Shown here: one piece after another, positions 33,604 through 33,742 of the stretch
Numbering within the stretch: the stretch's first letter is position 1
Layout of the letters: each line of letters begins with the position of its first letter
IMG/VR virus record: IMGVR_UViG_3300042261_001312
Span: 124,001-188,000 of that record
Strand: one strand, 5' to 3'
Length of the DNA stretch: 64,000 nucleotides
Notes under the pieces: generated by a model
Seen by the model: the letters and a program-made list of their open reading frames with translations, nothing else
What the model was told of the DNA's origin: nothing
Databases searched by the model: none
Translations under genes and position numbers: made by a program

Positions 33604-33742
33604 GGGAAAACGAAAAGTGTTTACAGTAATTCGTCGGTTCGAATCCGATATTGTTCGCCAAAAATGAACGATTAGCCTAGCGGTTAAGGCACAAGTCAGT
33701 GAAACTTGCATTAAAAACAAAAAATACTTTTAAAATGTTCCC
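33604..33742 (+). ncRNA. Circularly permuted tRNA-His(GTG)-like RNA closed by the shared module (YrlA-like topology)
   Basis: Order: T arm (33633-33649), acceptor 3' strand + G + CCA, AAAA linker, acceptor 5' strand, D arm GCCT/AGGC, anticodon arm CAAGT-CAGTGAA-ACTTG. Enclosed by AAAAGTGTTT/AAATACTTTT and a GGGAA/TTCCC terminal helix. Confidence 0.8.

What the first reader, a model, noticed from the sequence alone, without database searches (positions are those of the whole stretch)
33604..33742. Complete circularly permuted tRNA-His-like cloverleaf with CCA buried in a loop
5' to 3' order: T arm GTCGG-TTCGAAT-CCGAT, acceptor 3' strand ATTGTTC, G73, CCA, AAAA, T(-1), acceptor 5' strand GAACGAT, D arm GCCT-AGCGGTTA-AGGC, anticodon arm with GTG. 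The break is in the variable loop, where the shared stem enters. There is even a -1:73 pair, echoing the extra pair of tRNA-His. YrlA has T-acceptor-D order but, as I recall, no anticodon arm, so retaining one here is unusual. Inference: either a non-chargeable mimic, or a permuted gene that is circularised and re-opened at CCA/AAAA to yield a tRNA.
Basis: partly seen in the sequence, partly recalled or inferred. Interest (0 to 1): 0.85.

Follow-up and report, generated by a model that had tools for sequence, protein, structure and literature searches.

The report
Permuted tRNA-shaped phage Y RNA
The permuted tRNA cloverleaf is a real, conserved small RNA of a huge uncultivated phage, and it is most likely a Y RNA, the partner RNA of a hidden Ro60-type RNA-binding protein encoded just downstream, not a gene for tRNA-His.

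Summary
The element (33604-33742, + strand) folds as closing stem, T arm, closed 7-bp acceptor hairpin with GCCA in its loop, D arm and anticodon arm.

It is not chance. One copy lies upstream of the same gene in 72 of 74 related jumbo-phage loci. 23 of 35 base pairs show compensatory changes, and the tertiary 15:48 pair covaries without exception.

The downstream 555-aa protein has no Pfam hit. A confident model (pLDDT 91) matches only Ro60/Rsr structures among its top hits. The RNA is therefore best read as a YrlA-like Y RNA.

It differs from known YrlA:
- It keeps a complete anticodon arm.
- The conserved closing stem enters at the variable loop.
- Rfam's YrlA model does not detect it.

The "tRNA-His" reading fails. 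GTG occurs in 1 of 51 distinct copies, and U33 is not conserved. NCCA is kept in 35 of 51, so RNase P opening, as in M. smegmatis YrlA, remains possible.

The same conserved stem is also grafted onto a second, unpermuted tRNA-like RNA in the window (32745-32883). An ARPP-1 gene always follows the Ro60-like gene.

Verdict: a new variant of a known kind. Binding to the Ro60-like protein is inferred, not shown.

The parts
33604..33742 (+). RNA-B: the permuted four-arm tRNA-like Y RNA, which is the finding
   Evidence: Sequence, MFE fold, covariation. Covariance model R1 scores 162.6 bits here and finds one copy in 72 of 74 related sources.
33604..33632 (+). Scaffold 5' strand: helix 1 GGGAA, internal loop AACG, helix 2 AAAAGTGTTT, linker ACAGTAATTC. 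Proposed binding site for the Ro60-like protein.
   Evidence: Top-residue frequency is 0.99 (GGGAA), 0.90 (helix 2) and 0.96 (ACAGTAA) over 51 distinct copies, against 0.62-0.66 for the acceptor strands. The same motif occurs in RNA-A and in RNAs upstream of distant Ro60-like genes.
33633..33649 (+). T arm GTCGG-TTCGAAT-CCGAT
   Evidence: 3 of 5 pairs have compensatory changes; the loop is nearly invariant.
33650..33672 (+). Closed acceptor hairpin: ATTGTTC / GAACGAT with loop GCCAAAAAT (G73, CCA, spacer, U-1)
   Evidence: All 7 pairs covary. NCCA is present in 35 of 51 copies, a 5-nt loop in 8, and other loops in 8.
33673..33691 (+). U8-A9, D arm GCCT-AGCGGTTA-AGGC, A26
   Evidence: TA frequency is 0.97. 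D-loop A14, G18 and G19 are invariant or nearly so. The middle D-stem pair switches A-U/C-G 23:21. The Levitt pair is G15:C48 in 44 copies and A15:U48 in 7, with no exception.
33692..33708 (+). Anticodon arm CAAGT-CAGTGAA-ACTTG
   Evidence: All 5 stem pairs covary. The loop sequence is not conserved except A37 and A38.
33709..33742 (+). A-rich 3' linker and scaffold 3' strand (AAATACTTTT, AAAATG, TTCCC)
   Evidence: Conservation is 0.93 (helix 2) and 0.99 (helix 1).
34189..35856 (+). Divergent Ro60/TROVE-like protein (555 aa): helical ring plus C-terminal vWA domain with MIDAS motif D386-x-S-x-S ... D456
   Evidence: AF2 model has pLDDT 91.2. The top 12 Foldseek PDB hits are all Ro60/Rsr/phage phiLo Ro60, E 2.7e-7 to 1e-3, TM up to 0.53. 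BFVD hits include Ro-like and TROVE proteins. ESM Atlas: 70 of 100 named hits are TROVE clusters. MIDAS residues are invariant in A5.
35868..36965 (+). ARPP-1 domain protein, a conserved downstream partner of the Ro60-like gene
   Evidence: Pfam PF20208, E 2.9e-12. It follows the Ro60-like gene in 63 close loci and in all four distant relatives looked up.
32745..32883 (+). RNA-A: a second scaffold-bearing tRNA-like RNA in normal order. Acceptor GGAGGGT 32746-52 / ACCCTCC 32875-81, A73. The scaffold forms an internal hairpin at 32772-32817 followed by ACAGTAA. Anticodon-like arm 32836-52, T arm 32858-74.
   Evidence: Sequence. Conserved in most related loci. 19 of 30 pairs have compensatory changes.
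33753..33848 (+). RNA-C: a third conserved structured RNA ending in a hairpin plus T-run
   Evidence: Conserved 77-87%. 11 of 17 pairs have compensatory changes.
32519..32703 (+). tRNA-Asn(GTT) and tRNA-Met(CAT), at the head of the same-strand RNA gene cluster
   Evidence: ARAGORN and Rfam.
32894..33574 (+). SegB-like GIY-YIG homing endonuclease inserted between RNA-A and RNA-B. It is mobile and not part of the system.
   Evidence: Pfam and PHROG hits, T4 segB similarity. tblastn finds it in 11 loci, about 6 distinct phage contigs besides the window's own, at varying positions.

Best explanation
The element is a phage-encoded Y RNA of the tRNA-mimic (YrlA-like) kind. It is the RNA partner of a highly divergent Ro60/TROVE-vWA protein encoded about 450 bases downstream on the same strand.

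Shown:
- The RNA folds into a complete tRNA body (T arm, closed acceptor hairpin, D arm, anticodon arm) with the tertiary-contact nucleotides of an L-shaped tRNA.
- The 5' and 3' ends form a nearly invariant bulged stem that leaves the body at the variable-loop position. The result looks like a long variable arm opened at its tip.
- The RNA and the Ro60-like gene occur together in every related locus that has enough flanking sequence.
- The protein has the Ro60 fold.

Inferred:
- The invariant stem (GGGAAAAC..AAAGUGUUUACAGUAA paired with AAAUACUUU..UUCCC) is the docking site for the Ro60-like ring, as in other Y RNAs.
- The tRNA-shaped body is the effector module. It tethers the ring to a tRNA-recognising factor, or presents a tRNA decoy, during infection. 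This probably serves tRNA/RNA quality control, repair or counter-defence, together with the always-adjacent ARPP-1 protein.

Speculative:
- In the lineages that keep a 7-bp stem followed by NCCA, RNase P may cut the acceptor loop. Trimming would then leave a two-piece, CCA-ended mimic, as seen for M. smegmatis YrlA.

The RNA does not decode histidine codons.
For: RNA structure:
- 23 of 35 pairs carry compensatory changes. 98.6% of cells are paired, against 37-56% for slid controls, with 0 of 500 shuffles reaching the observed values.
- The Levitt pair is G15:C48 in 44 copies and A15:U48 in 7, with no exceptions.
- U8-A9, A14, G18, G19 and the T loop are conserved.

Linkage:
- Model R1 finds exactly one copy, same strand, upstream of the gene, in 72 of 74 sources.
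- In an independent motif scan, the 35 loci that held a Ro60-like gene all had the motif upstream on the same strand; 5 more held the RNA but ended under 900 bases downstream of it.

Protein:
- Model pLDDT 91.2, pTM 0.89.
- The top 12 PDB fold hits are all Ro60/Rsr/phiLo Ro60 over about 590 columns.
- Viral library hits include Ro-like and TROVE proteins.
- Language-model neighbours are TROVE clusters.
- The MIDAS motif is invariant.

Scaffold:
- It is the most conserved part of the RNA.
- It is shared by RNA-A in the window.
- It is matched by the model upstream of Ro60-like genes that are only 29-31% identical (L081, L204).

Precedent:
- YrlA RNAs are described as circularly permuted tRNA mimics encoded within 4 kb and on the same strand as Ro60, including in phages. 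Two Y-like RNAs lie upstream of phage phiLo Ro60.
Against: - No binding data exist.
- The protein is Ro60-like only at fold level: TM is about 0.5, Pfam TROVE does not hit, sequence searches of the PDB are negative, and hhalign against Bxz1 Ro gives 50% probability over the vWA part only.
- The canonical GNCGAAN0-1G motif is not conserved. The family consensus is AAC[G/U]NAAAG.
- Rfam's YrlA model gives no hit at E <= 10, while it does hit the Bxz1 control.
- One related contig (L072) has RNA-A and the gene but lacks RNA-B.
- Phage tRNA clusters attract many genes, so neighbourhood alone is weak evidence.
- The scaffold could instead bind ARPP-1 or another protein.
Confidence: 0.72

Rival explanations
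1. A tRNA-shaped decoy or cofactor that works independently of the Ro60-like protein. It might bait host anticodon nucleases or other tRNA-targeting defence toxins. The conserved stem would then bind a different partner, such as ARPP-1 or the 380-aa protein, or serve only for stability and processing.
For: The complete anticodon arm, with a mostly tRNA-like loop frame (C32 in 39 of 51, U33 in 35 of 51, A37 in 45 of 51), is kept although the triplet drifts. ARPP-1 and the 380-aa gene are as tightly linked as the Ro60-like gene. The Ro60 assignment is at fold level only.
Against: The architecture of a terminal bulged stem plus a tRNA-like module, on the same strand upstream of a Ro60-fold gene, with several such RNAs in tandem, is the known Y RNA arrangement. 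The scaffold motif tracks Ro60-like genes down to 29-31% protein identity.
Confidence: 0.15
2. A circularly permuted tRNA gene, as in Cyanidioschyzon merolae. Its transcript would be circularised and re-opened at the acceptor to give a functional tRNA-His.
For: The 3' half comes before the 5' half. A 7-bp acceptor is followed by G73-CCA. All four arms and the tertiary nucleotides are present.
Against: The GTG anticodon occurs in 1 of 51 copies. U33 is absent here and in 16 of 51. CCA is lost in 16 of 51, and 8 copies have a 5-nt loop. U-1.G73 is not the His identity pair. The flanks form an invariant stem rather than a processing helix, and I saw no bulge-helix-bulge motif. As far as I know, the splicing-endonuclease/ligase route used for permuted tRNAs is not a bacterial pathway.
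Confidence: 0.03
3. A non-functional fossil: the junction of two decayed tandem tRNA genes, or a rearrangement scar left by the adjacent SegB-like homing endonuclease.
For: It lies in a tRNA cluster immediately after a GIY-YIG homing endonuclease gene. NCCA, a short A/T spacer and then a 5' acceptor strand look like a junction between tRNA genes. A dimeric-tRNA origin has been proposed for YrlA.
Against: 51 distinct copies at 69-90% identity keep every helix through compensatory changes. The endonuclease is present in only about 6 distinct related contigs, while the RNA is in 72 of 74 sources. A dimeric-tRNA origin may well be the history, but the element is under purifying selection now.
Confidence: 0.02
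4. A cis-acting leader, riboswitch- or T-box-like, that controls the downstream Ro60-like operon.
For: Same strand, upstream, and followed by hairpin plus T-run elements at 33827-33848 and about 34053-34100.
Against: The distance to the gene varies from about 290 to 1700 bases, with inserted genes in some loci. Another RNA and terminator-like hairpins lie in between. The tRNA-like fold with a closing stem is a self-contained unit.
Confidence: 0.03

Closest known systems
YrlA (Y RNA-like A; Rfam RF02553) of Salmonella, M. smegmatis and mycobacteriophages
   Same: It is encoded upstream of, and on the same strand as, a Ro60-fold gene. The 5' and 3' ends form a stem. The order is T arm, closed acceptor-like hairpin, UA, D arm. 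The tRNA tertiary nucleotides, including a covarying Levitt pair, are kept. A 7-bp acceptor like that of M. smegmatis YrlA makes RNase P cleavage conceivable.
   Different: YrlA has no anticodon loop, and its Ro60-binding stem continues from the anticodon stem. Here a closed 5-bp/7-nt anticodon arm is kept, and the terminal stem enters at the variable region through conserved single-stranded linkers. NCCA is encoded in the loop of most copies. The GNCGAAN0-1G motif is not conserved. The Rfam model does not detect it. The protein partner is not recognised by Pfam TROVE.
Yrl1/Yrl2 of Thermus phage phiLo and Yrn1/Yrn2 of Deinococcus radiodurans
   Same: Several Y-type RNAs sit in tandem upstream of a (phage) Ro60 gene. 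Each has a 5'-3' stem with an internal loop as the protein-binding module.
   Different: The phiLo RNAs are described as stem-bulge-stem RNAs with a CGAA motif, with no complete tRNA body mentioned. Yrn1 has its Ro-binding stem at the acceptor position and an incomplete D arm.
Circularly permuted tRNA genes (Cyanidioschyzon merolae and some archaea)
   Same: The gene order puts the 3' half before the 5' half, with the acceptor strands joined by a short spacer.
   Different: Those genes yield decoding tRNAs with fixed anticodons through a circular intermediate. Here the anticodon drifts, the flanks are an invariant structured stem, and the context is a phage of bacteria.
Phage T4 stable RNAs C and D (species 1 and 2), downstream of segB in the tRNA cluster
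   Same: Similar genomic setting: tRNA cluster, SegB-type endonuclease, then stable RNAs of unknown function, one with a T-arm-like hairpin.
   Different: No sequence or structural match. Model R1 hits only tRNA pairs in the T4 region (39.5 bits over tRNA-Leu/Gly). T4 is not known to encode Ro60, as far as I know.

Membership tests
YrlA-type Y RNA (Chen et al. 2014; Rfam RF02553) | Encoded within about 4 kb of, and on the same strand as, a Ro60 orthologue | tested here: met
   The RNA lies 447 bases upstream of a Ro60-fold gene. One copy is present upstream on the same strand in 72 of 74 related sources.
YrlA-type Y RNA (Chen et al. 2014; Rfam RF02553) | tRNA-like module in the order T arm, closed acceptor-like stem-loop, UA, D arm, with tRNA tertiary nucleotides | tested here: met
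   Covariation in all arms. Levitt pair 44 G:C and 7 A:U with no exceptions. UA, A14, G18, G19 and the T loop are conserved.
YrlA-type Y RNA (Chen et al. 2014; Rfam RF02553) | Ro60-binding stem continues from the anticodon-stem position; no anticodon loop | tested here: not met
   A closed anticodon arm is present and covaries (5 of 5 pairs). The terminal stem joins between the anticodon arm and the T arm.
YrlA-type Y RNA (Chen et al. 2014; Rfam RF02553) | GNCGAAN0-1G motif near the 5' end | tested here: inconclusive
   The window has AACGAAAAG at the same relative place. The family consensus is AAC[G/U]NAAAG, the leading G is absent, and CGAA is not conserved.
YrlA-type Y RNA (Chen et al. 2014; Rfam RF02553) | Match to the Rfam covariance model | tested here: not met
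   No YrlA hit at E <= 10 in 33450-33900. Positive control: Bxz1, upstream of gp220, scores 32.5 bits, E 2e-4.
YrlA-type Y RNA (Chen et al. 2014; Rfam RF02553) | Physically bound by Ro60 | not testable with these tools
   Needs co-purification or a gel-shift assay.
Ro60 / TROVE protein (the proposed partner, 34189-35856) | Ring of helical repeats followed by a vWA domain with a MIDAS motif | tested here: met
   Model pLDDT 91.2. The top 12 PDB matches are all Ro60-type over both domains. DxSxS...D is invariant.
Ro60 / TROVE protein (the proposed partner, 34189-35856) | Sequence match to Pfam TROVE (PF05731) or to solved Ro60 sequences | tested here: not met
   No TROVE hit in the window protein, in the 24 close relatives aligned with it, or in 10 distant relatives. 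PDB sequence and profile searches are negative. hhalign against Bxz1 Ro gives 50% probability over the vWA part only.
Decoding tRNA-His | Conserved GUG anticodon with U33, and a G-1:C73 identity pair | tested here: not met
   GTG in 1 of 51 copies. Position 33 is A in the window. The window has U-1.G73.
Decoding tRNA-His | Recognised by tRNA finders | tested here: not met
   ARAGORN and the Rfam tRNA model report only tRNA-Asn and tRNA-Met in the window.
Permuted tRNA gene (C. merolae type) | 3' half precedes 5' half, with acceptor strands joined by a spacer | tested here: met
   Sequence order.
Permuted tRNA gene (C. merolae type) | Product is a decoding tRNA of fixed identity, made through a circular intermediate | tested here: not met
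   The anticodon is not conserved and CCA is lost in 16 of 51 copies. The circular intermediate itself cannot be tested here.
Two-piece (permuted) tmRNA | Detected by ARAGORN as tmRNA, with a tag reading frame | tested here: not met
   No tmRNA reported in the window.

The most novel reading that the evidence does not exclude
Huge phages carry a deep-branching, so far unannotated Ro60-like/ARPP-1 ribonucleoprotein system. Its Y-type RNAs are built by grafting one conserved protein-binding stem onto complete tRNA bodies in at least three topologies:
- entering at the variable loop, with permuted ends (this finding; also L204);
- as an internal hairpin in the D region of an otherwise normal tRNA-like RNA (RNA-A);
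- as a leader/trailer stem around a normally ordered tRNA body (L081, perhaps L205).

In the permuted form, the genomically encoded NCCA in the closed acceptor loop would be functional. RNase P would open the loop to give a two-piece, CCA-ended, possibly chargeable tRNA tethered to the Ro60 ring. That RNA would be used to bait or neutralise host tRNA-targeting defences, or to channel damaged tRNAs to repair.
Probability: 0.15. Interest if true: 0.85.

Novelty: new variant of a known kind. Interest (0 to 1): 0.66.

Why it matters
Y RNAs and Ro60 are conserved from bacteria to humans, yet what the tRNA-like module of bacterial Y RNAs binds is still unknown.

This family offers a natural experiment. 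The same conserved stem is attached to whole tRNA bodies in different topologies, over more than 100 phage contigs, with rich covariation. The protein partner is a Ro60 relative that standard annotation misses, and it is always paired with an ARPP-1 enzyme-like protein.

- It widens the known range of Ro60 systems in viruses.
- It gives a clean sequence motif for mapping the protein-RNA interface.
- It makes testable whether a tRNA mimic with an intact anticodon arm and an encoded CCA is processed like a tRNA.
- It corrects a tempting misreading, that a permuted cloverleaf with GTG is a tRNA-His gene.

Tried and rejected
- ARAGORN and Rfam, at gathering thresholds and at E <= 10, found nothing at the locus.
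- The single-sequence folding energy is not significant (z = -0.72), so it was not used as evidence.
- Nucleotide search of GenBank phages with 32400-34200 hit only the segB-like gene.
- T4 rnaC and rnaD were read and folded as possible analogues. There is no similarity, and model R1 hits only tRNA pairs in that region.
- Sequence-based identification of the 555-aa protein failed with Pfam, PHROGs, NCBIfam, PADLOC, PDB phmmer, and two PDB profile searches. The word-indexed homologue search returned only unannotated close relatives. tblastn against GenBank phages gave one unannotated huge-phage record.
- A first structure model from 25 close sequences was only moderate (pLDDT 70.8). It was replaced by one from a 75-sequence alignment.
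- A degenerate scaffold motif scanned over IMG/VR gave 118 new loci. 78 are chance matches with no RNA structure, so the motif alone is not diagnostic.
- Two review papers on bacterial Y RNAs are not held in the library.
- Rejected readings are a decoding tRNA-His, a permuted tRNA gene, a dead tRNA junction or endonuclease scar, a permuted tmRNA, and a cis-regulatory leader. Reasons are under rival explanations and the membership test.
- The genes around the finding are intact under table 11.
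Full report

| Feature | Sequence | Coordinates |
|---|---|---|
| Closing helix, 5' strand | GGGAA | 33604-33608 |
| Internal loop | AACG | 33609-33612 |
| Second helix, 5' strand | AAAAGTGTTT | 33613-33622 |
| Single-stranded linker | ACAGTAATTC | 33623-33632 |
| T arm | GTCGG-TTCGAAT-CCGAT | 33633-33649 |
| Acceptor 3' strand | ATTGTTC | 33650-33656 |
| Loop | G-CCA-AAAA-T | 33657-33665 |
| Acceptor 5' strand | GAACGAT | 33666-33672 |
| U8-A9 | TA | 33673-33674 |
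| D arm | GCCT-AGCGGTTA-AGGC | 33675-33690 |
| Position 26 | A | 33691 |
| Anticodon arm | CAAGT-CAGTGAA-ACTTG | 33692-33708 |
| A-rich linker | CATTAAAAACAAA | 33709-33721 |
| Second helix, 3' strand | AAATACTTTT | 33722-33731 |
| Closing helix, 3' strand | TTCCC | 33738-33742 |

An unconstrained fold of 33590-33760 returns this structure as the minimum. Its energy is ordinary for the base composition (z = -0.72). ARAGORN finds only tRNA-Asn (32519-32591) and tRNA-Met (32631-32703). Rfam finds nothing at the locus, even at E <= 10.

**Is it more than chance?** The window belongs to a ~327-kb jumbo phage contig. The protein encoded just downstream (34189-35856) has relatives in 75 other viral contigs. 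blastn finds a homologue of the RNA, 69-90% identical, upstream of that gene in almost all of them.

- An alignment of 44 distinct copies gives an RNAalifold consensus identical to the proposed structure. 23 of 35 pairs carry compensatory double changes.
- Counting pairs on the named structure gives 98.6% paired cells. Sliding the partners by 1-3 columns gives 37-56%. None of 500 shuffles reaches any observed measure. All 7 acceptor pairs and all 5 anticodon-stem pairs covary.
- A covariance model built from 42 copies finds exactly one copy, on the same strand and upstream of the gene, in 72 of 74 sources. One exception has too little flank. The other (L072) has a homing endonuclease where RNA-B and RNA-C would be.

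**A tRNA-like three-dimensional fold.** Over 51 distinct copies:

- U8-A9, A14, G18-G19, A21 and the T loop TTCGAAT are nearly invariant.
- The nucleotide before the T stem (position 48) is C whenever position 15 is G (44 copies). It is T whenever position 15 is A (7 copies). There is no exception, so the Levitt pair covaries.

This matches the pattern reported for YrlA.

**Not a tRNA-His.** The anticodon triplet varies: CTT 11, GTT 8, ATT 6, TTA 5, TGA 5, ATG 4, and GTG only in the window. U33 is present in 35 of 51 copies and is A in the window. The first and last loop nucleotides can pair in 47 of 51 (U.G here), so the '-1:73 pair' is simply an eighth pair of the hairpin.

NCCA directly follows the 7-bp stem in 35 of 51 copies. 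Eight copies have a 5-nt loop (mostly CAATG), and eight have other loops. CCA is therefore favoured but dispensable.

**The neighbour.** The 555-aa protein has no Pfam, PHROG, NCBIfam or PADLOC family, and no sequence match in the PDB. Its C-terminal half carries an invariant DxSxS...D(G) MIDAS motif.

- A profile search of 1.84 billion representatives gave 377 relatives.
- A 75-sequence alignment of these gave a model with pLDDT 91.2 and pTM 0.89.
- The 12 best PDB matches of that model are all Ro60-type proteins: Xenopus and human Ro60, Deinococcus Rsr and Thermus phage phiLo Ro60. E-values run from 2.7e-7 to 1e-3, TM reaches 0.53, and the alignments span both domains.
- The viral structure library returns Ro-like and TROVE proteins.
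- Language-model neighbours are TROVE/vWA_Ro60 clusters: 70 of 100 named hits, score 0.94, 182-184 shared features.
- Pfam TROVE is not detected, even in 10 distant relatives. hhalign against mycobacteriophage Bxz1 Ro gives only 50% probability, over the vWA part.

The assignment therefore rests on fold and architecture, not sequence.

**What is known.**
- Chen et al. 2014 found YrlA RNAs within 4 kb of Ro60 genes, on the same strand, in 254 bacterial species and 22 phages. These RNAs have T, acceptor-like and D stem-loops, a GNCGAAN0-1G motif near the 5' end, and a covarying Levitt pair. M. smegmatis YrlA has a 7-bp acceptor stem, is cut by RNase P and gains CCA.
- The YrlA crystal-structure preprint calls most YrlAs circularly permuted tRNAs with closed acceptor loops. 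It states that YrlA lacks the anticodon loop and that the Ro60-binding module extends from the anticodon stem.
- Thermus phage phiLo has two Y-like RNAs upstream of its Ro60.
- Some jumbo phages are known to encode TROVE proteins with a tRNA-like partner.

**How this RNA differs.** It keeps a closed, covarying anticodon arm. The terminal stem joins the body between the anticodon arm and the T arm, through conserved single-stranded linkers (ACAGUAA on the 5' side, an A-rich ACAA-type linker on the 3' side). Topologically it is a tRNA with a long variable arm opened at its tip and acceptor ends closed by a loop. Rfam's YrlA model hits the Bxz1 control (32.5 bits, E 2e-4) but not this RNA.

**The scaffold as the likely protein-binding module.**
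- It is the most conserved part of the RNA. Top-residue frequency is 0.99 for both strands of helix 1, 0.90-0.93 for helix 2 and 0.96 for ACAGTAA. The acceptor strands score 0.62-0.66.
- The window holds a second RNA with the same scaffold, RNA-A (32745-32883). It has a normal acceptor stem (GGAGGGT/ACCCTCC, then A73), an anticodon-like arm and a T arm. The scaffold sits as a closed hairpin in the D region, again followed by ACAGTAA. RNA-A is conserved in most related loci, and 19 of 30 pairs carry compensatory changes.
- Upstream of Ro60-like genes that are only 29-31% identical, model R1 again matches. In L204 it matches the whole permuted four-arm architecture (47.5 bits, E 1.7e-9). In L081 it matches the scaffold around a tRNA-like body in normal D-anticodon-T order.
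- In L205 (26% identity), two ARAGORN-called tRNAs lie directly upstream of the gene: one with anticodon UUA and a tRNA-Gln. Their 5' leaders resemble the scaffold 5' strand by eye only.

**Other members of the locus.**
- A third conserved structured RNA, RNA-C (33753-33848), follows RNA-B. It ends in a hairpin plus T-run, and 11 of 17 pairs are compensatory.
- An ARPP-1 gene (35868-36965, Pfam E 2.9e-12) follows the Ro60-like gene in 63 close loci and in all four distant relatives examined. ARPP was described as a probable enzyme acting on ribose-containing substrates in ADP-ribose-related conflict systems.
- The SegB-like endonuclease between RNA-A and RNA-B is found in 11 loci, about 6 distinct contigs besides the window's own, so it is a mobile insertion.

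**Mechanism.**
- Shown: the fold, its tRNA-like tertiary signature, its strict linkage to a Ro60-fold gene, and the shared scaffold.
- Inferred: the scaffold docks the Ro60-like ring. The tRNA body recruits or mimics a substrate for a tRNA-recognising factor, in RNA quality control, repair or counter-defence.
- Speculative: RNase P opens the loop in NCCA-bearing lineages.

I put 0.72 on the Y RNA reading and 0.15 on a Ro60-independent decoy or cofactor. Each of the other rivals (permuted tRNA gene, fossil junction, cis-regulatory leader) gets 0.03 or less.

**Novelty and interest.** tRNA-mimicking Y RNAs next to Ro60 genes, including in phages, are established. This is not a new kind of system. 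New here are:

- the complete four-arm body with variable-loop entry;
- the encoded NCCA;
- the modular reuse of one scaffold on differently arranged tRNA bodies;
- the cryptic Ro60 family with its constant ARPP-1 partner.

I found no description of these in the searchable literature. I rate it a new variant of a known kind, with interest 0.66.

Noticed in passing
window 32745-32883 (+): RNA-A is a second conserved tRNA-like RNA with a normal 7-bp acceptor stem, T arm and anticodon-like arm. It carries the same conserved scaffold as the finding, but as an internal hairpin in the D region. It is present, sometimes twice, in most related loci. The listed ORF 32562-32831 overlaps it and is probably spurious.
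   Followed up: yes
window 33753-33848 (+): RNA-C is a third conserved structured RNA directly after the finding. It has a covarying stem TGATAC/GTATCA, an invariant CCTAACATTTGATGGTTAAGAATGGTTTT, and then a hairpin with conserved loop CAGAAGTG plus a T-run. Its function is unknown; it may be a YrlB-like partner.
   Followed up: partly
window 35868-36965 (+); also L081, L204, L205, L206: An ARPP-1 domain gene follows the Ro60-like gene in every close locus with enough sequence and in all four distant relatives checked. This Ro60-like/ARPP-1 gene pair did not turn up in the papers I searched. The 380-aa gene at 37092-38234, which has no family, is also syntenic in 59 loci.
   Followed up: partly
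window 32894-33574 (+); L072:3075-3686: A SegB-like GIY-YIG homing endonuclease is inserted in the RNA gene cluster. It has about 70% nucleotide identity to T4 segB over 270 bases. It occurs in only a few related phages, at different places. In L072 it coincides with the absence of RNA-B and RNA-C.
   Followed up: partly
L205:2720-2794 and 2857-2931; L081:1150-1226: In distant relatives, ARAGORN calls suppressor-type tRNAs near the Ro60-like gene: anticodon TTA in L205 directly upstream, and CTA in L081 about 2.8 kb upstream. The two L205 tRNAs (TTA and Gln-TTG) have 5' leaders that resemble the scaffold 5' strand by eye. It was not checked whether those phages use a recoded stop codon.
   Followed up: no
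L087:6454-6612 and 6868-7028: One related contig carries two full-length copies of the permuted RNA-B, at 105.8 and 113.3 bits.
   Followed up: no
window 60819-63641, 7766-8821, 9519-10559 (+): LAGLIDADG domains occur in three places. One is embedded in an SNF2-type helicase, so it is a likely intein. The other two are in 350-aa ORFs. The genome is rich in homing elements.
   Followed up: no
window 11287-19532 (+): A sugar-nucleotide and glycosylation cluster holds two family-2 glycosyltransferases, GDP-mannose 4,6-dehydratase, UDP-GlcNAc 2-epimerase and a PfkB-type kinase.
   Followed up: no
window 32445-32452 (+): TATGTTTG fits the TAnnTTTG -7 promoter element of Bacteroidota as I recall it. 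It lies about 67 bases upstream of tRNA-Asn at the head of the RNA cluster. One family member is filed under a Porphyromonadaceae MAG. This is a hint about the host only.
   Followed up: no
window 34053-34100 (+): A strong GC-rich hairpin followed by a T-run lies between the RNA cluster and the Ro60-like gene. It is retained even in L072. It probably ends the RNA operon, with a sigma-70-like promoter match at 34113-34142 just after it.
   Followed up: no
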